Below are positions 11,548-51,242 of a DNA stretch of 51,242 nt, piece by piece; within the stretch, counting starts at the first letter, position 1; each line of letters starts with the position of its first letter. The notes under the pieces are model-generated. The model had not been told where the DNA came from. It did not search any database and was given only the letters and a program-made list of their open reading frames with translations. Where the stretch lies: contig NC_068982.1 of assembly GCF_001194135.2 (NCBI RefSeq), forward strand, positions 10,800,385 through 10,851,626, read 5' to 3'. The DNA is from Octopus bimaculoides. Lineage: Eukaryota. Both the position numbers and the translations under genes were made by a program.

Positions 11548-11905
11548 AACGTCTTCTCATGCAGATGATACCGTCCTGTTCAGCAACTCGATCGACCAGC
11601 TCAAGGGTGCACTGACCATATACAAAGAAGAATCGGCAATGCTTGACTTTCAGGCGAGCTGGGCGAAGACGACTCGGACTTTCCTTCCTCCATATTGGGC
11701 CCTTTGTCGTGGAGCTTGCCAGTTCCTTCATCAATCTAGGCTCCACAGTCACCAAGAATGGAGACCTGACCATGGAGATCAACCGCAGATCAATCCCGCT
11801 TTGGTAAATGCAGAGAAGCTGGCACGGGACCGCCCGTGATGGAGAATACTAGTGGACCTGGTCGGCTCTGAGCATGATGACGTCCTTAGGACCATTAACC
11901 TGGGA
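11548..11905 (+). mobile_element. RTE-like LINE fragment, RT C-half joined by deletion to the C-terminus
   Basis: HADDTVLFSNSIDQL..SWAKT, frameshift, VELASSFINLGSTVTKNGDLTMEINRR, then KLARDRP*WRILV. Confidence 0.75.
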
Positions 11906-12149
11906 TGATCCCTGCCTCATCAAGCAAGAGCTTCAAGCGATGTGAGCGAACTGGCAGCTTGTGGTACTGCCATGTTGTAGTGAGCAGACTGTTTACGCTG
12001 GAATCTGAAATTTCAGTATTAGATTTTTACGTCAGCGTTCATATTTCTCTTTGCAACCGTTATACGTTGCCTGCTCTTTATTTTATAGTTTTGCTCGCCA
12101 TGAGAATATTTCCAAAAGTTGCCTGTTTTGTGGTAAACTATAAACAGTT

Positions 12150-12355
12150 GGTCTCATTCAATACGTTAAACTTAATATGGAAATCATTAATACTAAGCAA
12201 GAAGACCAAAATACGATTTTACAAAATCAACATATTTACAATCTTCCTCCAAGGATCCGAATGTTGGAAAACAACCGAAAGTATTGAAAAGAAATTGGAG
12301 GTGTTTCAAACTTAAATGTTTACGAAAAAGTTTGAAGGTCTACTGGTCGAGATCA
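12150..12355 (+). mobile_element. RTE-like LINE fragment (post-RT region)
   Basis: LNLIWKSLILSKKTKIRFYK..IFLQGSECWKTTESIEKKLEVFQT*(CL)RK..KVYW matches the RTE IWKS..TK..LLYG.E.W...L.VF..KCLR pattern. Confidence 0.75.
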
Positions 12356-12832: not shown

Positions 12833-14764
12833 GATTTTTACTCCGTCTGGCTGTTTATTCTCTCAACATAACGGAAAGTTACATTGTAGAACAGTCATTT
12901 TAACACGAGTNNNNNNNNNNNNNNNNNNNNNNNNNNNNNNNNNNNNNNNNNNNNNNNNNNNNNNNNNNNNNNNNNNNNNNNNNNNNNNNNNNNNNNNNNN
13001 NNNNNNNNNNNNNNNNNNNNNNNNNNNNNNNNNNNNNNNNNNNNNNNNNNNNNNNNNNNNNNNNNNNNNNNNNNNNNNNNNNNNNNNNNNNNNNNNNNNN
13101 NNNNNNNNNNNNNNNNNNNNNNNNNNNNNNNNNNNNNNNNNNNNNNNNNNNNNNNNNNNNNNNNNNNNNNNNNNNNNNNNNNNNNNNNNNNNNNNNNNNN
13201 NNNNNNNNNNNNNNNNNNNNNNNNNNNNNNNNNNNNNNNNNNNNNNNNNNNNNNNNNNNNNNNNNNNNNNNNNNNNNNNNNNNNNNNNNNNNNNNNNNNN
13301 NNNNNNNNNNNNNNNNNTACATACATACATACATACATACGTACGTGGACAGATACGCACTCACGTCACAGTGAAGCACCCAATCAGCGACCACGTCGAA
13401 CTTCTGAAGCACGTGGCTGTGTCCGCTTCAGCGTTTCTCCCTCTGTCTCTGTCTCCTTTTGTATCTCTGTACACAGACATAGATACACACAAATATACAT
13501 AAATACAATTGTGTGTGTATCTTTGAATACATATATATGTGTGTATTGTATGAGCATAATATCAAAGAAACACTTCCATCCAACCACATCAAAAACAAAC
13601 TTTTCCTTTTATTGTAAAGCCTCTAATGTTTAATCCTCATTCACCTGATTACATTATGCATTTTCCTCTGTTCTTCTACCCACGTTTAACAATTAGCTCT
13701 AAAAGACCAAATCAATATATTTTCTACTTGCTTTCTGTCTTTTTGTTTGCTTTTTGTTATCTAGTAGCATCAAGAAATATTCAAATATATTCGAGTACAA
13801 TCAGTTGTCCTTCTGCCAGTTTGAGAAGATGCCAAAAACCATAGAAAAGTAAAGAAATACAGTTCTCATACAATTAGCACTATTATATATTTTTTCCTTA
13901 ATGAGATATTCTTGGCCTAAATTCAAACGGGGGATCTTTCACTCAATTTCTGGAAGAGAGATTCGGTGCTAGGAGGAATTTATTCCAACTTTATAAAGCA
14001 ATTTTTTCTGTCATCTTGCCTTATGTTTTTTTAGCTCCAAAATAGTCTTTGAACAAAATAACTTCCCATCATAGTACATTTACATTCTCAGTAGAATATA
14101 TTTAATTTTAATCCGTTAATATATATAACAAGTGTGCATATACATTTTACGCAGTCCCGTTGTATATAGATTATACTTATGTAACTGTAATCTCATCATT
14201 TGATTAAATGAAGAGGTTTTAATAAAACTGGTGCTGCTACTATTAATTACAAATAATGATTTATAAATCTGCAGCAAATTATTAACAAATTTCGCAATAT
14301 TCAATTTTATAGCATACATTCCCTATTTCTGATTCAATAAAAGGCAAACAGACGGTTCGAAAGCAAAACAATTTATTTCAATTGTTTTCAAAATGTAATT
14401 ATTAAAGTGTTTATTGCTCTATAATTTTAAAAAGAATAATGTATTAACTAACCTGGCAATTTGCCAGCATTCGATTTTGTATTATTTTTATCTTGATAGC
14501 TATATATTTTGAGGAGAAATTTTAAAATCAGGATGTACATAAATTATCCAGCAGTAGGCGTAAGTGAAAAGGCTTCTATCAAGAATTAAAAGTGTGCGGA
14601 ATATCCAAATTACCGGTGACTGGCATTTTGGTAACCATTGCATAATAGATATAAAATCTAAAAATTATAATTTTAAAGTTTCTTCTACAAACTGTAATAT
14701 TCTCCTTGAACTGTAATATTTTACTTTTCTATCTGAGGACGGCCTGTCTCTAAGTATGAAATAT

Positions 14765-19196: not shown

Positions 19197-19461
19197 AACG
19201 ATAAAATAAAACACTATTTATCAAACAGACGTGGGACGTGGCAGCTAACTTTCCTGGAGGTAGGTTGTTTGTTTGCTATCACTGATGCCGCAATCCACCC
19301 GGAATGAGAAATCACAGGTGTAAGAATTATTCTTACAGTAACAGTGACAAGGTTAATATTAGCTTGCAGTGAAAGATTCAAATCCTCTTCATATGAGGTT
19401 GGCTTATCTAGGAAACTTTACCTTTGATAATAGGCATAGGGGAAGGCATGACAATGACATC

Positions 19462-19730
19462 AGAAGCTTGCTTCCCAACAACGTGGTTCCGGGTTCAGTC
19501 CCATTGCGTGTCATCTTGAACTTCTACTACAGCTTCGTGGGTAGTAAAAGTCTTGTGAGTGGATCTCATAGATACAAACTGAAAGAAGCCCGTCGTAGTG
19601 GCTGTGTGGTAAAAAGCTTCCATCCCAACTACCTGGTTCCGGGTTCAGTCCCACTGCGTGGCACCCTGAACAAGTATCTTTTACTATAGCCTCGGGCCTT
19701 GTGAGAAGATTTGGTAGACGGAAACTGAAA
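19462..19730 (+). mobile_element. Two tandem SINE family A head/core copies (19462-19596, 19597-19730)
   Basis: Both carry ggttccgggttcagtccca..gcgtg..gaaactgaaa. Confidence 0.88.
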
Positions 19731-19732
19731 AT

Positions 19733-20291
19733 ACCCCGAAAGGATGAAAGGCAAAATTTACCTCGGCAGAATTTGAACTCCGAACGTTAAGACAGACGAA
19801 ATACCGCTAAGCATTTCGACCGGCGTACTAACGTTTCTGCCACCTTGCCGCCTTAAGAACAGTTAAATATTCTTTTCTACTGTAAGCACAAGGCCCGAAA
19901 TTTGGTGGAGAGGAGGCCAATCGACGCCAGTATGCAACTGGTACTTAATTTATCGACCCTGAAAGGATGAAAGACAAAGTCGACCTCGGCGGAGTTTGAA
20001 CTCAGAACATAAAGACAGACGAAATATCGCTAAGCATTTCACCCAGCGTGCTAACGTTTCTTATTTTTTTATTGCCCACAAGGGGCTAACCATAGGACGG
20101 ACAAGGGCAGTCAAAGTGATTAAGTCGATTACATCGACCCCAGTGCGCAATTGGCACTTAATTTATCGACCCCGAAAGGATGAAAGACAAAGTCAACCTC
20201 GACAGAATTTGAACTCAGAAAGTAGCGGCAGACGAAATACCGCTAAGCATTTTGCTAGGCGTGCTAACGTTTCTGCCAGCCCACCGCCTTC
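19733..20291 (-). mobile_element. Three consecutive SINE family B copies (19733-19854, 19866-20060, 20062-20291)
   Basis: Each has gaccccgaaaggatgaaag..gaactc..gctaagcattt; the third has a different 3' tail (ttattgcccacaaggggctaa). Confidence 0.9.
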
Positions 20292-21175: not shown

Positions 21176-21743
21176 TCTCTCAGATAAAGGTGAAAACATT
21201 CGTGCTACACGCAATATCATCCGACATTTTTTAACACCTTTTACATTCTGAATTGAAGTAGTATTTTGATTTTCCGTCCTAAATATATATATCTTTTTCA
21301 AGATCAGTTTGTCGCTGCAAAAAGCATANNNNNNNNNNNNNNNNNNNNNNNNNNNNNNNNNNNNNNNNNNNNNNNNNNNNNNNNNNNNNNNNNNNNNNNN
21401 NNNNNNNNNNNNNNNNNNNNNNNNNNNNNNNNNNNNNNNNNNNNNNNNNNNNNNNNNNNNNNNNNNNNNNNNNNNNNNNNNNNNNNNNNNNNNNNNNNNN
21501 NNNNNNNNNNNNNNNNNNNNNNNNNNNNNNNNNNNNNNNNNNNNNNNNNNNNNNNNNNNNNNNNNNNNNNNNNNNNNNNNNNNNNNNNNNNNNNNNNNNN
21601 NNNNNNNNNNNNNNNNNNNNNNNNNNNNNNNNNNNNNNNNNNNNNNNNNNNNNNNNNNNNNNNNNNNNNNNNNNNNNNNNNNNNNNNNNNNNNNNNNNNN
21701 NNNNNNNNNNNNNNNNNNNNNNNNNNNNNNNNNNNNNNNNNNN

Positions 21744-22967: not shown

Positions 22968-23169
22968 ACTCTTTTACTCTTTTACTTGTTTCTTTTACTC
23001 TTTTACTGCGGCCATGCTGGAGCATGGCTTTTGGTCTAGCAAATCGACCCCAGGACTTATTCTTTGTAAGAATAGTACTTATTCTATCGGTCTCTTTTTG
23101 CCGAACCGCTAAGTTACGGGGGCGTAAACACACCAGCATCGGTTGTCAAGCGATGATGGGGGGACAAAA

Positions 23170-23221
<52 letters not shown>

Positions 23222-23383
23222 GACGGGCTTCTTTCAGTTTCCGTCTACCAAATCCACTCACAAGGCTTTGGTCGGCCCGAGGCTATAGTAGAAGACACTT
23301 GCCCAAAGTGCCACGCAGTGGGACTGAATCCGGAACCATGTGATTGGTAAGCAAGCTACTTACCACACAGCCACTCCTGCACC
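22968..23383 (-). mobile_element. SINE family A, full length with internal (TA)n
   Basis: Head/core 23220-23383, microsatellite, tail 22968-23175. Confidence 0.92.
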
Positions 23384-24111
23384 ATTAAATATGTCAAATA
23401 TTTAATGATATAGTAAAAATAAATGATTTAAAATATAATTCAATGAAGTTATTCTTTTATAAAGAATGTCGTCGCAATTCGCTAAACACTATGGCCTCTT
23501 TGCAGGACTAGAATATTTTTCAGTTATTATAATTAAAACATATAAAATTTAATTACACAAAATAATGTAAAAAAAACTGAAACCATATTGAAACGCCTCA
23601 GTATTTTGTACATAGCATCTTGATTAGAATCTTCGATGTGTACAGTACAGTATAGGTTATACAACGTGTGTATTGAATCTGAGATGAGTAGTCTCCTTAG
23701 TCTGTCCCTTGATCTGGTGCTTTCGTTTATATGTGTCTTATCCACAGCCAAATTCTACACCAACAATGAAAAATTTAGTATCTTCAAAATTTTAGCAAAT
23801 TCACTCGAAAATATGTCACAAGCAGATAATTTGTGCTTTTAATATATAAATCAATTGCAAATTATCTCTCGCTTCGGCATATCTCGTGATAATTCGTTTT
23901 AGTAACTGTCTAAATGTGGGGTTCAATATTATAAATTGAAAAATAATAATGATGGTTTGGCTTTGTGATAAGAAGCTTACTTCCCAACCTCATGATTCTG
24001 TTTTCACTCCTGCGTAGCACTTTGGACAAGCGCATCTTCTGCTTCTTGCCTCGGGCTGATTAAAGCCTTGTGAGAAGACTTGATAGACGGAAACTGAAAG
24101 AAGCCCGGGTC

Positions 24112-24597
24112 TGTGTGTATCATGTAAGACTAGAGATGGGAGCAATGACCTCCCTCGCAAATACTAATCGGACACTGACTGTGTGTCGTTGTCCAGTCTT
24201 TCTGGGGATAAAAACAACAGTAACACCGTCCTGTATAGGACCGCCACATTTAGTTGGCAAATATATTTTACGATTCTGAACTGTTACTGTTTATTTCTCG
24301 CTCAGGGATTTCTCAGCGTCAGTTTGCCGCTAGAAAAGGCATATAGTATTTTGCGAGTAGAATGAGTTGTTTATCACTAGCCAGTGATTAACACACACTG
24401 AGGACGGGTAACCAACCAGAAATCAGGGACTGTGTGCATCACGTAAGGCTAGAGATTGGAGCGATGACCTCCCTCAGAAATACTAATCGGACACAAACTA
24501 TGTCGTTGGCCAGCTGGAAGAGATACCTTGCTCGGGCTATAAAAAACAGTAACACAACCCTCGTGGGACCGCCACATTTAGTTGGCAAATATACTTT
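24112..24597 (+). repeat. 1.5 copies of a 319-nt unit (direct repeats 24112-24268 and 24431-24597), retrozyme-like
   Basis: Both repeats start tgtgtg(t/c)atca and end ggaccgccacatttagttggcaaatata; a hammerhead-like motif spans the junction. Confidence 0.7.
24392..24436 (+). ncRNA. Decayed hammerhead ribozyme motif at the unit junction
   Basis: CACACA-CTGAGGA-CGGGtaaccaaCCA-GAAA-TCAGGGAC-TGTGTG; perfect 6-bp stem I; first repeat is preceded by CCCGGGTC. Confidence 0.55.
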
Positions 24598-27500
24598 ATA
24601 TATCTATATAGATATTTATGTATGTATGATGTATTATATATGTATGTATGTATGTATGCGTGTCTTTGTGTCTGTTTGTCAACCTTAGCTGCTTGGTGAC
24701 TGGCGTTGGTGTATTTACGTTCCTGTAACTAAGCATTTCGGCAAAAGAGACGGGTAGAATCAGTACCAGGCTTTAAAAATTTAAGTACTGGATTAAATTC
24801 CTTCGACTAAAAATTCTTCAAGGCGGTGCCCCAGCATGGCCGCATTCTAATGAATGAAACACGTAAAAGGTGAAAGATAAGAGATAGACATATTTTCTCT
24901 GGACACATTTAAATGCAGAATATGCAAAACGCTATTTATCTTTCCTGTGGCATTGTAGATGTTTCTGAATAATCTCTGCGGAATAAAATCATAATTTCAA
25001 TTATAGTTGTATGATGAGACTCGACGAACGGAATTTACGACGACTAACTTGAGAATAGAGTCTTTAGATAAAGAAAGGCATATCAATTGTTATTCTATTG
25101 CAAAGAGTTTAGAAATTAGTGATCAATGAATGGGATTCTTATAAAAAGCATTGGTATCATTTCAGTACTCCATAGAAGGCTATATATGGCTTACAATAAA
25201 CGTCGCTGCAAACGATGGGCATATTCCGAAGCTTCTTTTGTGTAATTCTTGGCAAGTTTGTAAGCACGTGTGATGTGTGTGTTTTTCTCGCTTTGTTAGA
25301 ATAATATTTGCGTTGGCGAATATTTGAAAACTTGGTTGATACTAGGAGTGAAAGATAGTTGTGAAAGGAATATTTTGAACTTCTTCCTTTGTATTGGAAC
25401 GTATGAAGATAAAACTGTTGATTGAGAAAACGTATAATCAATAAAGAGATGGAATAATCAGATGCTTTGTATAAACACGTTCCTTAAAGCGAAAGACGAT
25501 TTGATTATCACGCTGGAATGCAAATATATAATTAACCTGAATTTTAGAAACATACATTGATTAAATTTTAGGTTAAAAATTCAAGAAGTGGCTTTTCATT
25601 TTCAGACAATGGATGTCAAGTTAACTACAAAACCTTCGAATTATAAATCATCATCAAATTACCCTTGTGTATATCCATGTGTTCGTATATATGTGATGGT
25701 GGTGGGGTATATGTTTGTAAGCAATTGGGATACTAATCATTAGTATGACTACTATTATAAATCTCATTTTATCTGCTGACAACCATGAAACCACTGTTTC
25801 ATTGTCATACTCAGCATGTAACTTTAATGGTAACATTTTCAAGTTGCGTCTTTTTACTGTCCGTTTTAAAGAAAAACATTGTCACTGACTCCGTTATCTA
25901 TTGTTGAATTACTATGACTACTGTCAAGTGGTTAACAAAATAATTGGTTTTAAATGGAGAATATTACGGGAAGTAATAAATTAGAAAACACTGTGTACTT
26001 GATAAGGATCAAATTTAGACCAGAAATTGTCTGAAAGAATATTTCATATATCTGACAAATGAAAATTGTTCACTGTGAAATATTTCTTCCTGTTGCACCA
26101 GAGGAAGTAATAAACCTGCAATTCCTTACACCCTTCCATGTATTTATGAGGCTAAACATTGTTATATTTGCGGTTATGCAACACAGTTCCAGTGGCGTTG
26201 GTTTGCTTTAAAATATTCATTATATTAATACAGTGTATATAAGTGTATACATTCATAAAAGTGAAGCTGTTTATAAAGCGATCGACTTGGAGACCGAATT
26301 ATTTCTGCTTCTCTGACTCCAATAACTATAAACATTTGTAGTAATCAAATTAAATCCTACATGATATCTAATCAATAAGCTGATATTCACAGCATAAAAA
26401 ACAAGTACTCTCTTTCTCCTGCTATCTTGCTTATTTAGAGCGGTCAACATTTGTATGCTGACTTTATGTGTAATCTATCAAAATCTTACAACTACTTGGT
26501 TTAATAACCATCAGAGTATTATATGGCCAGAGTAATATGACTTTCGTATGTGACGAGAGTTGAAGAGCTAAAAGTGTTTGACTATTTTCGTTCAATAACG
26601 CAATTTCTATTCCAGTTGGATGGTATCTCATCTCATATAAAAGTAATGACCTTGGGAAAAAATCAACAGCGAGATAATTTTCCTCTTCGACGACATAAAA
26701 TGTTTCTGTGTCTAATCAAAATATACAGATAATAATATGTTTTCCAGTAGTGAAGTTATATATTCGGTGGTTTTACTGTTCATTAAATTAACAACTGAAT
26801 ACAATTTCTTTTACTCGAAAAAAGTAATGCACGTTTCTTATCAAAAGAAAATGGAAAACCGGAAGTTGCGATATTGATGCATTTCTCAAAACAATGAAAT
26901 GTTTCATATATTTTTTCATGACTTTTTACGTTGTCTTTTGTGTTCGCAAATGATTACTCGGAATTGACCCTTAGATATTACTGTTTTATTTTTTAGTCAT
27001 TTATTTATTTCTTCTCTAGATCAATCATCTTAAGAGAAAAAGCAATACAGTGATTGTTTCTTTCTGTTGACTGTAATTATTAAATTAAGGTAAAAATTAC
27101 TTAGCTAATTTCTGCATTCTAATGTGAAGCTATTTTACTTTACTTATAGAAAAGGCGTGAACACTTAAATATCACATCAATCTCAAACTTTACTGATATT
27201 TTCGAATCCATTCCCTAATCTATTGCACTCCCCACGACAGAAAGCATAAAAGGCAATGTGTATCTCGTCGGTCAAGCTCGTAAAAGGAAACTAAAACAAC
27301 AAACGGAGAAGGAGCGGGTGATCGTTAGAGATGCTGAATGCAGGCGAACAGTTGTAAAAGGTTTTGATCAGAAATCGCCGGCATTTAATCCAAATAAAAC
27401 TGAAAATCGTTATGATTAATTGTATTTGGCTTGAATTTCACACAGTCATATAAACATATAAATATATATGTGAAATTAAATATTAAACTCGTCTGTTTTT

Positions 27501-28758: not shown

Positions 28759-29534
28759 NNNNNNNNNNNNNNNNNNNNNNNNNNNNNNNNNNNNNNNNNN
28801 NNNNNNNNNNNNNNNNNNNNNNNNNNNNNNNNNNNNNNNNNNNNNNNNNNNNNNNNNNNNNNNNNNNNNNNNNNNNNNNNNNNNNNNNNNNNNNNNNNNN
28901 NNNNNNNNNNNNNNNNNNNNNNNNNNNNNNNNNNNNNNNNNNNNNNNNNNNNNNNNNNNNNNNNNNNNNNNNNNNNNNNNNNNNNNNNNNNNNNNNNNNN
29001 NNNNNNNNNNNNNNNNNNNNNNNNNNNNNNNNNNNNNNNNNNNNNNNNNNNNNNNNNNNNNNNNNNNNNNNNNNNNNNNNNNNNNNNNNNNNNNNNNNNN
29101 NNNNNNNNNNNNNNNNNNNNNNNNNNNNNNNNNNNNNNNNNNNNNNNNNNNNNNNNNNNNNNNNNNNNNNNNNNNNNNNNNNNNNNNNTATATATATCTT
29201 TTTGAATGTGTGATGTTAAATTTAGACAAAATGCTCCAAGATAATTCTGAAGAGCGGTTTTTTTTGTTTTTTTTTGGAAGTTTTGCTTTTGTTCATCAAG
29301 ACTAGTTGATTAGAAGCGAACTTGTGGTCAATGCAAGATCATTATAATCCCGTCTCGAAACGATGTTTTTCACTCGACGTCTTAAATTCATACTTTTAAG
29401 TTCTTTATTTCACCTGACGTGTAGGATTTCTGTTCTTTTTTGTTTGTTTTTTGTCCAAGTTGTTACTAAATTACAGTCGTCGTTTTGTGGACAGATTTAT
29501 CTTATTTATGTATATGTATGTACGTGAGTAATGA

Positions 29535-34715: not shown

Positions 34716-35424
34716 TTAACAAAAGAAACAGAGACAGACAGAAACAAGGAAAATGACCCTGGTATTTGAATACTATACAAATATGTTTTTAAAAAGACTT
34801 TCCATTTAAATTTGCCAAAATTTAATTCTTCCAAAGTTTGTTATCCATATTTACAGTTNNNNNNNNNNNNNNNNNNNNNNNNNNNNNNNNNNNNNNNNNN
34901 NNNNNNNNNNNNNNNNNNNNNNNNNNNNNNNNNNNNNNNNNNNNNNNNNNNNNNNNNNNNNNNNNNNNNNNNNNNNNNNNNNNNNNNNNNNNNNNNNNNN
35001 NNNNNNNNNNNNNNNNNNNNNNNNNNNNNNNNNNNNNNNNNNNNNNNNNNNNNNNNNNNNNNNNNNNNNNNNNNNNNNNNNNNNNNNNNNNNNNNNNNNN
35101 NNNNNNNNNNNNNNNNNNNNNNNNNNNNNNNNNNNNNNNNNNNNNNNNNNNNNNNNNNNNNNNNNNNNNNNNNNNNNNNNNNNNNNNNNNNNNNNNNNNN
35201 NNNNNNNNNNNNNNNNNNNNNNNNNNNNNNNNNNNNNNNNNNNNNNNNNNNNNNNNNNNNNNNNNNNNNNNNGCCCTGTGGGGGAATATTTAAACTTCGT
35301 GAGAGTGAAACGTATTTTCGACACAATATAATTATTTCCTATTTTATTCCTCTCCATTAAACACACTTGCGTCTGTCATCGCTTTCTCCCTATAGACACT
35401 GACAGACGTACAGAGACAGAGACG

Positions 35425-41460: not shown

Positions 41461-41650
41461 GCGCAGGTGTTGCTGTGTGGGAAGAAGCTTCCTTCGCAAC
41501 CACATAGTTTGGGGCTCAGTCCCACTGCGTGGCACCTTGAGCGAGTGTCATCTATACTCTCGGGCCGACCAAAACATCTTGATTGGATTTGGTGGAGGGA
41601 AACAGAAAGAAGCCCGTTGTATATATTTGTGTATGTGTGTGTATGTGTGT
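41461..41650 (+). mobile_element. SINE family A head/core, diverged
   Basis: ggcgcaggtgttgctgtgtgg...cccactgcgtggcaccttg...gaaagaagcccgttgta. Confidence 0.85.
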
Positions 41651-48535: not shown

Positions 48536-49304
48536 NNNNNNNNNNNNNNNNNNNNNNNNNNNNNNNNNNNNNNNNNNNNNNNNNNNNNNNNNNNNNNNNN
48601 NNNNNNNNNNNNNNNNNNNNNNNNNNNNNNNNNNNNNNNNNNNNNNNNNNNNNNNNNNNNNNNNNNNNNNNNNNNNNNNNNNNNNNNNNNNNNNNNNNNN
48701 NNNNNNNNNNNNNNNNNNNNNNNNNNNNNNNNNNNNNNNNNNNNNNNNNNNNNNNNNNNNNNNNNNNNNNNNNNNNNNNNNNNNNNNNNNNNNNNNNNNN
48801 NNNNNNNNNNNNNNNNNNNNNNNNNNNNNNNNNNNNNNNNNNNNNNNNNNNNNNNNNNNNNNNNNNNNNNNNNNNNNNNNNNNNNNNNNNNNNNNNNNNN
48901 NNNNNNNNNNNNNNNNNNNNNNNNNNNNNNNNNNNNNNNNNNNNNNNNNNNNNNNNNNNNNNNNNNNNNNNNNNNNNNNNNNNNNNNNNNNNNNNNNNNN
49001 NNNNNNNNNNNNNNNNNNNNNNNNNNNNNNNNNNNNNNNNNNNNNNNNNNNNNNNNNNNNNNNNNNNNNNNNNNNNNNNNNNNNNNNNNNNNNNNNNNNN
49101 NNNNNNNNNNNNNNNNNNNNNNNNNNNNNNNNNNNNNNNNNNNNNNNNNNNNNNNNNNNNNNNNNNNNNNNNNNNNNNNNNNNNNNNNNNNNNNNNNNNN
49201 NNNNNNNNNNNNNNNNNNNNNNNNNNNGTGTGTGTTTGTGTGTGTGTGTGTAAAGAAAATGAATGTTCACAAGCTCGGAAATAAACGTAAATTAATCCAG
49301 TAAA

Positions 49305-49940: not shown

Positions 49941-50491
49941 ATAATCTGTAATAAAAGAGAAGGAAATAAACTTTTCAAGCACGGTTCTATGTTTGGTGCA
50001 CTTTCAGTTCTATGTATTTTCAATACTTTTTGTGCATTGAACGAAGATGAGATATATTAAAGGAAGTTAATAATAAAATCATAATATAGATCACATGGGA
50101 ATATCGACTTCGCTACGATAAAACAAAAGAATTATATTAATGAAGTATATCAGAGAAATGGTGAATATGAAAGTATTTGTGTGAATAGAGGAATAGAGGA
50201 ATAGATGAGAGATATCAAGGATTTGGAATCCGTTATGTTCAAGCGTATTAGTTTAATGAAATGATATGTTAAATAAATACAAAAAATGTATGTATATATA
50301 TATATATATNNNNNNNNNNNNNNNNNNNNNNNNNNNNNNNNNNNNNNNNNNNNNNNNNNNNNNNNNNNNNNNNNNNNNNNNNNNNNNNNNNNNNNNNNNN
50401 NNNNNNNNNNNNNNNNNNNNNNNNNNNNNNNNNNNNNNNNNNNNNNNNNNNNNNNNNNNNNNNNNNNNNNNNNNNNNNNNNNNNNTATATA

Positions 50492-51082: not shown

Positions 51083-51242
51083 GCGCAGGAGTGGCTGTGT
51101 GGTAAGTAGCTTGCTTACCAACCACATGGTTCCGGGTTCAGTCCCACTGCGTGGCACCTTGGGCAAGTGTCTTCTACTATAGCCTCGGGCCGACCAAAGC
51201 CTTGTGAGTGGATTTAGTAGACGGAAACTGAAAGAAGCCCAT
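51083..51242 (+). mobile_element. SINE family A, near consensus, cut by window end
   Basis: Near-identical to 23220-23383 and 10050-10216. Confidence 0.93.

What the first reader, a model, noticed from the sequence alone, without database searches (positions are those of the whole stretch)
24104..24597. Retrozyme-like 319-nt tandem unit bounded by hammerhead cleavage sites, inserted inside a SINE
Seen: two diverged direct repeats (24112-24268, 24431-24597) start 319 nt apart. Both begin exactly at the 3' strand of stem I of a hammerhead motif at the junction (CACACA-CTGAGGA-stem II-GAAA-...-TGTGTG). The first repeat is preceded by CCCGGGTC, giving a GUC triplet and, with a preceding A, the palindrome ACCCGGGU. 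The junction copy has decayed to TCAGGGAC. No ORF, tRNA head or TIR is present. Known: animal non-LTR retrozymes are short tandem units cut by type I hammerheads into monomers that circularise. Inference: this is a decayed copy of a cephalopod retrozyme or Penelope-dependent family that landed in the microsatellite slot of a family A SINE. I am not aware of such a family being described in octopus, but could not check.
Basis: partly seen in the sequence, partly recalled or inferred. Interest (0 to 1): 0.85.

Follow-up and report, generated by a model that had tools for sequence, protein, structure and literature searches.

The report
Decayed hammerhead-like repeat inside a SINE
A 491-base insertion in the microsatellite slot of a SINE is one and a half head-to-tail copies of a ~320-base, hairpin-shaped, non-coding repeat whose tip carries a slightly broken hammerhead-ribozyme motif; it is probably a dead copy of a retrozyme-type (Penelope-dependent) mobile element, a known kind of element, but one locus cannot prove it.

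Summary
The direct repeats are real: R1 24108-24270 and R2 24427-24598 match at 86% of aligned bases, with indels. Together with a unique spacer S they form a 491-bp insert exactly between the head and the microsatellite of a SINE. No other copy lies in the window, and none could be fetched from any collection.

The hammerhead strings are present (CUGAGGA 24398-24404, GAAA 24419-24422, C17 at 24430). The motif is not intact: 10.1/11.1 is G·A, 15.1/16.1 is A·A, and no Rfam hammerhead model matches.

The unit is therefore a ~78-bp rod. The hammerhead-like core is its 32-nt apical loop, with helix I continuing into the rod, as expected of a type I hammerhead retrozyme.

The CCCGGG "palindrome" is a SINE/insert chimera. 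The repeat homology starts 4-13 nt before the predicted cleavage site, not exactly at it.

Verdict: probably (about 0.5) a decayed retrozyme-like, Penelope-type non-autonomous element. That makes it a new member of a known kind, of modest interest. Family consensus, copy number, circular RNA and self-cleavage are all untested.

The parts
23958..24107 (+). Head of the host SINE, ending ...GACGGAAACTGAAAGAAGCCCG
   Evidence: blastn against 7-8 other copies in the window. All other copies continue TCGTA plus a microsatellite after GCCCG.
24108..24598 (+). 491-bp insert, about 1.5 head-to-tail units (R1-S-R2) of a 319-328-nt repeat; GC 44% against 32% for the window
   Evidence: There is no other copy in the window.
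24108..24270 (+). R1, the first copy of the direct repeat. In-register similarity to the R2 flank extends back to 24099, overlapping the SINE end and suggesting 5'-junction microhomology
24271..24397 (+). Spacer S: a diverged inverted complement of R that forms the 5' arm of the rod with R2 (and with R1)
   Evidence: Local alignment of R against revcomp(S) gives p=0.001. With helix I excluded, p=0.0007 and 0.004, and direct-orientation controls score at background. The MFE fold has 78 S-R2 pairs, 10 of them G-U.
24384..24442 (+). Hammerhead-like type I motif. Helix I: 24392-24397/24431-24436, internal loop UAA/C, then 24384-24388/24438-24442. Core CUGAGGA 24398-24404. Unpaired C 24405. Helix II: G24406·A24418 (mismatch), 24407-24409/24415-24417, loop AACCA. 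GAAA 24419-24422. Helix III region 24423-24429, with A15.1·A16.1. C17 at 24430. Predicted cleavage between 24430 and 24431
   Evidence: No Rfam hammerhead match. The hammerhead fold scores -11.5 kcal/mol against an MFE of -18.3, in which CUGA pairs with UCAG.
24427..24598 (+). R2, the second copy of the direct repeat and the 3' arm of the rod. It ends ...AAATATACTTTA against the SINE (TA)-type microsatellite
24566..24598 (+). Best-conserved block of the repeat (32 of 33 identical to 24238-24270): GGACCGCCACATTTAGTTGGCAAATATAYTTTA. It is the unpaired 3' tail, or second terminal loop, of the unit and the 3' end of the insert
   Evidence: (family D4) and the folds
24599..24680 (+). Microsatellite of the host SINE (TA / TATG / TGTGTGTC)
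24681..24877 (+). Tail of the host SINE
   Evidence: blastn to the tails of other copies, and the inverted copy at 22970-23373

Best explanation
The 491-bp insert is a dead, partial-tandem (about 1.5-unit) copy of a ~320-330-nt non-coding, non-autonomous retroelement of the retrozyme / Penelope-dependent kind.

Inferred mechanism:
1. The unit RNA folds into a quasi-rod.
2. One tip of the rod is a type I hammerhead three-way junction, with helix I formed by the end of the rod and helices II and III inside the 32-nt apical loop. The other tip carries a conserved 3' tail.
3. In the active family, oligomeric transcripts would be cut after GUC into monomers, which can be circularised.
4. A Penelope-like (or microsatellite-targeting LINE) reverse transcriptase then copied more than one unit length of a circular or multimeric RNA.
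5. Priming was on the TA-rich target through the unit's AUAUA(Y)UUUA stretch. The 5' junction was closed by microhomology between the unit's AGAAA.C.GGG.C and the SINE's AGAAGCCCG.
6. Since insertion the copy has decayed: 11.1 is now A and 16.1 is now A.

Shown directly: the repeat architecture, the position in the SINE, the rod, the core strings, and the broken pairs.

Inferred only: ribozyme ancestry, the RNA intermediate, the identity of the reverse transcriptase, and the junction mechanics.
For: 1. Head-to-tail repeat with a 319-328 nt period sits exactly at the SINE head/microsatellite boundary.
2. In-situ tandem duplication is excluded. Neither the sequence before R1 nor the sequence after R2 is homologous to S, so the 1.5-unit arrangement arrived pre-formed.
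3. S is an inverted complement of R, giving a 78-bp rod. Shuffle tests give p=0.001, and 0.0007/0.004 without helix I. Folding z-scores are -2.3 to -3.9.
4. The apical 32-nt loop begins with CUGAGGA directly after the last rod pair. GAAA lies 14 nt later, and C17 lies 8 nt after that, directly before the rod resumes. I estimate a chance of about 2e-5 per loop and strand.
5. Helix I is 6 bp, then an internal loop, then 5 bp. There is a single unpaired nucleotide between A9 and helix II, as described for Penelope hammerheads (PMC4209133).
6. Only two single-base changes (A24418 to C, A24429 to U) are needed for G10.1-C11.1 and A15.1-U16.1. The R1 homologue of 16.1 is T, giving GUC.
7. Size, GC below 50%, and absence of ORF, LTR ends and PBS fit the published description of metazoan non-LTR retrozymes (PMC7229834).
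8. Penelope-like elements insert preferentially in microsatellites including (TA)n and form partial tandems (PMC8557442). Octopus genomes carry active Penelope families (PMC13282606).
Against: 1. The one complete motif is not a valid hammerhead: G·A at 10.1/11.1, A·A at 15.1/16.1, and only 3 Watson-Crick pairs in helix II.
2. No Rfam hammerhead model reports it, even at E<=10 on 81 nt. The same library gave only 12.3 bits to a much better core at 5546, so this negative is weak.
3. The hammerhead fold is 6.8 kcal/mol worse than the MFE, in which CUGA pairs with UCAG.
4. The lax descriptor is not rare: 0.14-0.35 hits expected per window and 4 observed.
5. There is only one motif and one locus. 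No family consensus, covariation, copy number or expression data are available.
6. Loop 3 is not palindromic.
7. The insert starts 4-13 nt upstream of the predicted cleavage site, so the 5' end is not explained by self-cleavage.
Confidence: 0.5

Rival explanations
1. An unrelated hairpin-forming short repeat (an unclassified non-autonomous retroelement, minisatellite or foldback-type element) arrived as 1.5 units. Its loop resembles a hammerhead core only by chance.
For: The lax descriptor hits 4 times in this window, against 0.14-0.35 expected by chance. Two defining pairs are broken and Rfam is silent. The MFE fold simply extends the hairpin by pairing CUGA with UCAG. Stem I is a low-complexity CA/TG run. 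No family data exist.
Against: All 11 invariant core bases are intact and placed flush against both sides of the rod end, with correct spacing. I estimate about 1e-4 for the two loops and two strands. The extra nucleotide after A9 and the GUC in the R1 copy fit Penelope-type hammerheads.
Confidence: 0.3
2. A MITE-like DNA transposon with long imperfect inverted arms inserted at a TA site of the microsatellite and was later partly duplicated.
For: S and R2 form a long imperfect inverted repeat whose outer ends pair best (TGTTACTGTTTATT / AAAAAACAGTAACA, 93%). The target is TA-rich, which is the preferred target of Stowaway-type MITEs (my own knowledge).
Against: The direct repeat R1/R2 extends 43 nt beyond the inverted arm into the best-conserved tail, which a MITE boundary would not include. 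There is no TA or other target-site duplication at 24281/24556 or at the insert ends. The insert termini are not inverted repeats. In-situ duplication is not supported.
Confidence: 0.1
3. Two independent insertions of the same 328-nt SINE-like, microsatellite-targeting non-LTR element (S+R) landed in tandem. The upstream copy is 5'-truncated to R1. The hammerhead is irrelevant to the architecture.
For: 5' truncation and head-to-tail stacking are typical of microsatellite-targeting LINE-dependent elements (my own knowledge). Dong-R4 LINEs are active in octopus (PMC13282606). R1 and R2 differ by 14% plus indels. The conserved 3' tail could be a reverse-transcriptase recognition site.
Against: No microsatellite remnant separates R1 from S: the junction is direct, TTTTA|CGATT. 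The truncation point falls within 4-13 nt of the predicted cleavage site. This rival is compatible with the element still being hammerhead-bearing.
Confidence: 0.07
4. R1 and R2 are the LTRs of a tiny LTR/TRIM-type element with a 156-nt internal region.
For: Two direct repeats flank a short unique region. R starts with TG, and a purine-rich AGAAATCAGGGA precedes R2.
Against: R ends in TTTA, not CA. No TGG-initiated primer-binding site follows R1 (S starts CGATTCTG). There is no target-site duplication. The internal region is complementary to the 'LTRs'.
Confidence: 0.03

Closest known systems
Metazoan non-LTR retrozymes (coral, mussel, axolotl; Cervera & de la Pena 2020, PMC7229834)
   Same: The unit is 319-328 nt (published range 170-400). 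It is arranged head to tail, has GC below 50%, and has no ORF, LTR, PBS or PPT. The monomer is highly self-paired. A type I hammerhead-like core sits at the unit junction, with helix I formed by the monomer ends.
   Different: Only 1.5 units and one motif are present. The motif lacks the 10.1-11.1 and 15.1-16.1 pairs. No family, array, circular RNA or cleavage is shown, and there is no sequence similarity to any described family.
Hammerheads in pseudo-LTRs of Penelope-like elements (Cervera & de la Pena 2014, PMC4209133; Craig et al. 2021, PMC8557442)
   Same: There is an unpaired nucleotide between A9 and helix II, and a short helix III. The insert is a partial tandem, giving pseudo-LTR-like direct repeats. 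It lies in a (TA)-type microsatellite.
   Different: G10.1-C11.1 is not present and loop 3 is not palindromic. Helix I is long (6+5 bp) rather than 4-5 bp. No Penelope ORF is nearby; the only RT relic in the window (11456-12315) looks LINE-like.
Schistosoma Sm-alpha SINE-like elements and newt satellite 2 (my own knowledge)
   Same: These are repeats of about 330 nt, both dispersed and tandem, carrying a type I hammerhead. They are non-coding.
   Different: Those hammerheads are intact and experimentally active. Sm-alpha has a tRNA-like Pol III head, which this unit lacks.
Plant LTR retrozymes (PMC4918200)
   Same: They are non-autonomous retroelements with a hammerhead in direct repeats, and they use circular RNA intermediates.
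   Different: They have type III hammerheads, true LTRs with PBS and PPT, 4-bp TSDs, GC above 55% and a 600-1000 nt size. None of these is seen here.

Membership tests
Type I hammerhead ribozyme (Rfam RF00163 and clan CL00010) | Conserved core C3-U-G-A-N-G-A9 and G12-A-A14, with H17 at the cleavage site | tested here: met
   CUGAGGA at 24398-24404, GAA(A) at 24419-24422, C at 24430
Type I hammerhead ribozyme (Rfam RF00163 and clan CL00010) | Helix II closed by a 10.1-11.1 pair (normally G-C), with at least 3-4 pairs | tested here: not met
   Best register is G24406·A24418 (a mismatch) followed by 3 Watson-Crick pairs and the loop AACCA. The strict descriptor does not accept it.
Type I hammerhead ribozyme (Rfam RF00163 and clan CL00010) | A15.1-U16.1 pair closing helix III | tested here: not met
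   A24422·A24429. The R1 homologue of 16.1 (24110) is T, so the ancestral state may have been U.
Type I hammerhead ribozyme (Rfam RF00163 and clan CL00010) | Helix I abutting the core and the cleavage site, open-ended (type I topology) | tested here: met
   6 bp, then an internal loop, then 5 bp, continuing into a 78-bp rod
Type I hammerhead ribozyme (Rfam RF00163 and clan CL00010) | Match to a curated covariance model | tested here: not met
   No hammerhead family appears at E<=10 on either 1 kb or 81 nt. Sensitivity is low: a better core at 5546 scored only 12.3 bits.
Type I hammerhead ribozyme (Rfam RF00163 and clan CL00010) | Self-cleavage at H17 | not testable with these tools
   Needs in vitro transcription of monomer and dimer constructs
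Metazoan non-LTR retrozyme | Short (about 150-450 bp) head-to-tail repeats, from dimers to multimers, each with a type I hammerhead | tested here: inconclusive
   There are 1.5 units with a 319-328 nt period and only one (defective) motif. Genome-wide arrays could not be searched.
Metazoan non-LTR retrozyme | Low GC (below 50%); no LTR, PBS, PPT or ORF | tested here: met
   GC is 43-44%. R ends TTTA and no TGG primer-binding site follows. The stop-free frames have no homologues.
Metazoan non-LTR retrozyme | Highly self-paired monomer RNA | tested here: met
   MFE is -92 to -95 kcal/mol and z-scores are -2.3 to -3.9. Arm complementarity gives p of 0.001 or less.
Metazoan non-LTR retrozyme | Multi-copy family expressed as linear and circular monomer RNAs | not testable with these tools
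   No eukaryotic genome or RNA-seq collection is available. Exact-word scans of metagenome and viral contigs, the protein database and paper texts found nothing.
Penelope-like element pseudo-LTR / min-hammerhead | Unpaired nucleotide between 9 and 10.1; G10.1-C11.1; palindromic 15.2-16.2 / loop 3 | tested here: inconclusive
   The extra C24405 is present. G10.1-C11.1 is absent, and the loop UCAGGG is not palindromic.
Penelope-like element pseudo-LTR / min-hammerhead | Partial-tandem insertion with a microsatellite target preference | tested here: met
   The 1.5-unit insert sits at the SINE (TA)-type microsatellite, and in-situ duplication is excluded.
LTR retrotransposon / TRIM / plant-type LTR retrozyme | TG...CA LTRs, PBS after the 5' LTR, PPT before the 3' LTR, 4-6 bp TSD | tested here: not met
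   R ends TTTA, and there is no PBS or TSD. Only a purine-rich stretch precedes R2.
MITE / foldback DNA transposon | Terminal inverted repeats at the element ends, flanked by a TSD | tested here: not met
   The insert termini are not inverted. The internal inverted arms have no TSD, and the direct repeat overruns them by 43 nt.

The most novel reading that the evidence does not exclude
The locus is a relic of a so-far undescribed cephalopod retrozyme family. Such a family would consist of ~320-nt rod-shaped RNAs cut by a type I hammerhead into monomers that circularise. It would be mobilised by Penelope-like elements and would preferentially colonise the (TA)n slots of SINEs. Intact, expressed copies would exist elsewhere in the genome.
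Probability: 0.2. Interest if true: 0.5.

Novelty: new member of a known kind. Interest (0 to 1): 0.35.

Why it matters
If the family is real, it would extend hammerhead retrozymes to cephalopods. It would also supply a case in which both insertion junctions show microhomology to a microsatellite target, which bears on how reverse transcriptases copy circular or multimeric retrozyme RNA. Retrozymes and Penelope hammerheads are already known in many invertebrates, including other molluscs. A single decayed copy is therefore an incremental observation, not a surprise.

Tried and rejected
Fetching other family members all failed:
- blastn of the unit, R2 and S against the window found only the locus itself.
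- Exact or IUPAC word scans of metagenome contigs and viral contigs gave 0 hits.
- A profile of the stop-free R peptides against the 5.8-billion-protein set gave 0 hits.
- Exact look-up of two window ORFs spanning R found them not on record. Raw ORFs of this genome are therefore not in that collection, and the protein negative is uninformative.
- k-mer searches of paper texts for the repeat and for the SINE gave 0 hits.
- Supplements of PMC8557442 are not held.

Hypotheses rejected:
- The spacer is a diverged SINE head, making a tandem head+R duplication. Alignment was no better than shuffles.
- In-situ tandem duplication. The flanks are not homologous to S.
- LTR/TRIM and MITE readings (see the membership tests).
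- Homology between this insert and the hammerhead-like element at 5505-5780. None was found.
- Homology to the motif at 9765-9806. It was only marginal: p=0.02 for the motif and 0.15 for the extended region.

Other:
- The organism could not be verified.

Full report
**Observation**

The direct repeats exist. R1 (24108-24270) and R2 (24427-24598) align over their whole length with 137 matches, 22 mismatches and 17 gap positions (JC distance 0.15). Start-to-start offsets are 319-328 nt. A unique spacer S (24271-24426) lies between them.

The 491-bp block R1-S-R2 interrupts a SINE. The head (23958-24107) ends ...GACGGAAACTGAAAGAAGCCCG. Seven other copies in the window share this end and continue TCGTA plus a TA/TG-type microsatellite. 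Here the microsatellite and SINE tail resume at 24599. blastn finds no other copy of R or S in the 51 kb.

**Details that need correction**

- In-register identity between the two copies continues upstream of the TGTGTG start. GGTC matches GGAC, and overall 9 of 13 positions match over 24099-24111 against 24418-24430. A simple binomial puts this at about 0.002 by chance.
- Nine of those 13 bases are SINE consensus. The CCCGGG "palindrome" is therefore a chimera of SINE CCCG plus insert GG, and it cannot be used to reconstruct an ancestral stem III.
- The overlap looks like 5'-junction microhomology.
- At the 3' end, the unit's AAATATAYTTTA abuts the (TA)-type microsatellite.
- Neither the sequence before R1 nor the sequence after R2 is homologous to S. 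A local tandem duplication is therefore excluded, and the 1.5-unit arrangement arrived as such.

**The hammerhead string**

CUGAGGA (24398-24404), GAAA (24419-24422) and C (24430) are present. They are bracketed by CACACA/UGUGUG. This stem continues, after a UAA/C internal loop, as GUGAU/AUCAC.

The best helix II register leaves C24405 unpaired and gives G24406·A24418, then three Watson-Crick pairs (24407-24409 with 24415-24417) and the loop AACCA. The helix III closing pair is A24422·A24429. Two defining pairs are therefore broken.

Each break is one substitution away from the canonical state. The R1 homologue of position 16.1 is T, which gives GUC.

No Rfam hammerhead model reports the site at E<=10, either on 1 kb or on 81 nt. 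That library is insensitive to this class: a much better core at 5546 reached only 12.3 bits.

The hammerhead fold scores -11.5 kcal/mol against an MFE of -18.3, in which CUGA pairs with UCAG.

A lax descriptor that accepts the site is expected 0.14-0.35 times per window of this composition and is found four times in the real window. The string by itself is weak evidence.

S is a diverged inverted complement of R. Local alignment of R1 or R2 against revcomp(S) beats 999 of 1000 shuffles. With the helix I bases removed the result stands (p=0.0007 and 0.004), while direct-orientation controls score at background.

S+R2 folds into a rod with 78 inter-arm pairs, 10 of them G-U. Folding z-scores are -2.3 to -3.9 on either strand.

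The rod has two tips:
- One is the 32-nt hammerhead-like loop, with helix I being the end of the rod.
- The other is a ~56-nt loop that holds the best-conserved block of the repeat (32 of 33 identical: GGACCGCCACATTTAGTTGGCAAATATAYTTTA). This block is also the 3' end of the insert.

A type I hammerhead at the end of a self-paired monomer is the geometry described for metazoan retrozymes (PMC7229834). Given the rod, I estimate how often a loop would begin flush with CUGANGA, hold GAAA at a suitable distance and end in H. The estimate is about 2e-5 per loop and strand. This positional coincidence, and not the string, is what argues against chance.

**Comparison with known systems**

- The unit fits the published description of non-LTR retrozymes: size, head-to-tail arrangement, GC 43-44%, absence of ORF/LTR/PBS/PPT and self-pairing.
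- The unpaired nucleotide after A9 is a feature of Penelope-element hammerheads (PMC4209133).
- Partial tandems and insertion into microsatellites including (TA)n are features of Penelope-like elements (PMC8557442).
- A 2026 preprint argues that animal retrozymes derive from Penelope pseudo-LTRs.
- Octopus vulgaris carries about 30 recently active Penelope families, and also Dong-R4 LINEs (PMC13282606).
- None of the papers found describes a cephalopod retrozyme.
- I could not verify that the window is from an octopus.

**Mechanism (inferred)**

1. Multimeric transcripts of a master array fold into rods.
2. The hammerhead cuts after GUC.
3. Monomers circularise.
4. A Penelope-type (or microsatellite-targeting LINE) reverse transcriptase primes on a nicked TA repeat through the unit's AUAUA-rich 3' tail.
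5. It runs more than once around the template.
6. The cDNA is joined upstream by microhomology to the SINE's AGAAGCCCG.
7. The copy then decayed.

Only the architecture, the rod, the core strings and the junction sequences are shown. Everything else is inference.

**Rivals**

| Rival | Confidence |
|---|---|
| Chance motif in an unrelated hairpin repeat | 0.3 |
| MITE-like element | 0.1 |
| Two stacked insertions of a 328-nt SINE-like element | 0.07 |
| LTR/TRIM | 0.03 |

The MITE and LTR readings fail their defining features: there are no TSDs, no terminal inverted ends, no TG...CA ends and no PBS, and the direct repeat overruns the inverted arm by 43 nt.

**Limits**

No eukaryotic genome or transcriptome collection was available. 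Word scans of metagenome and viral contigs, a peptide-profile search, exact ORF look-ups and paper-text k-mer searches all returned nothing. The window's own ORFs are not on record, so these negatives say nothing about copy number. Consensus, covariation, arrays, circular RNA and cleavage all remain untested.

**Verdict**

The best reading, at about 0.5, is a decayed retrozyme-like, Penelope-type non-autonomous element. That makes it a new member of a known kind, of modest interest.

Noticed in passing
window 5505-5780 (+), motif 5546-5586: A ~276-bp unique element is flanked on both sides by (TA)n (5468-5504, 5781-5812), directly after an assembly gap. It carries CUGAAGA-U-GGCUA-CGGAAA-UAGCC-GAAA: a perfect 5-bp helix II with G10.1-C11.1 and the extra nucleotide typical of Penelope hammerheads, plus a 5-bp helix I if cleavage is 3 nt after GUC. 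Rfam gives only 12.3 bits to Hammerhead_3 (E=4.5). It has no similarity to the 24108-24598 insert. It may be a second hammerhead-bearing element in a TA microsatellite.
   Followed up: partly
window 9765-9806 (-): GACAC-CUGAUGA-...-GAAA-CG-UU-GUGUU has a canonical core, a 1-bp helix III with a palindromic CG loop and a 5-bp helix I, but no convincing helix II. Motif-level similarity to the 24398 motif is marginal (p about 0.02). It may well be chance.
   Followed up: partly
window 10230-10348 (-) and 10058-10205 (-): A full-length 5S rRNA match (101.6 bits) is followed on the same strand, 24 nt later, by a copy of the SINE head and an (ATT)n tract. This is either a 5S gene with a SINE next to it or a 5S-headed composite SINE.
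   Followed up: no
window 11456-12315 (+): A frameshifted reverse-transcriptase relic (HADDTVLF, a weak RVT_1 match, and downstream LINE-like motifs). It looks like a LINE fragment, not a Penelope-like element.
   Followed up: partly
window 4943-5467, 7997-8953, 12911-13317, 21329-21743, 28759-29188, 34859-35272, 48536-49227, 50310-50485 and smaller runs: Runs of N (assembly gaps) create false long ORFs in several frames. About 4.1 kb of the window is unknown sequence.
   Followed up: yes
window 22970-23373 (-), 19459-19738 (+), 5870-6282 (+), 41466-41616 (+), 51092-51240 (+): Further copies of the same SINE family at 68-80% identity. These include an inverted copy 600 bp upstream of the host SINE and two heads in tandem at 19459-19738. 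The head-microsatellite junction is a recurrent site of rearrangement or insertion.
   Followed up: partly
window about 9845-9925 (+): A tRNA-like sequence with A and B boxes (GGCGTAGTGGTTAAGAGCGCGGGC...GAGTTCGATTCC) sits next to an (AAT)n tract. ARAGORN does not call it. It is probably the head of a different tRNA-derived SINE.
   Followed up: no
window 24112-24270 and 24431-24598: Both repeat copies are free of stop codons in the same three of six frames, and the net indel difference is 9 nt. No protein homologue exists in the searched database. This is unexplained and may be only a composition effect.
   Followed up: partly
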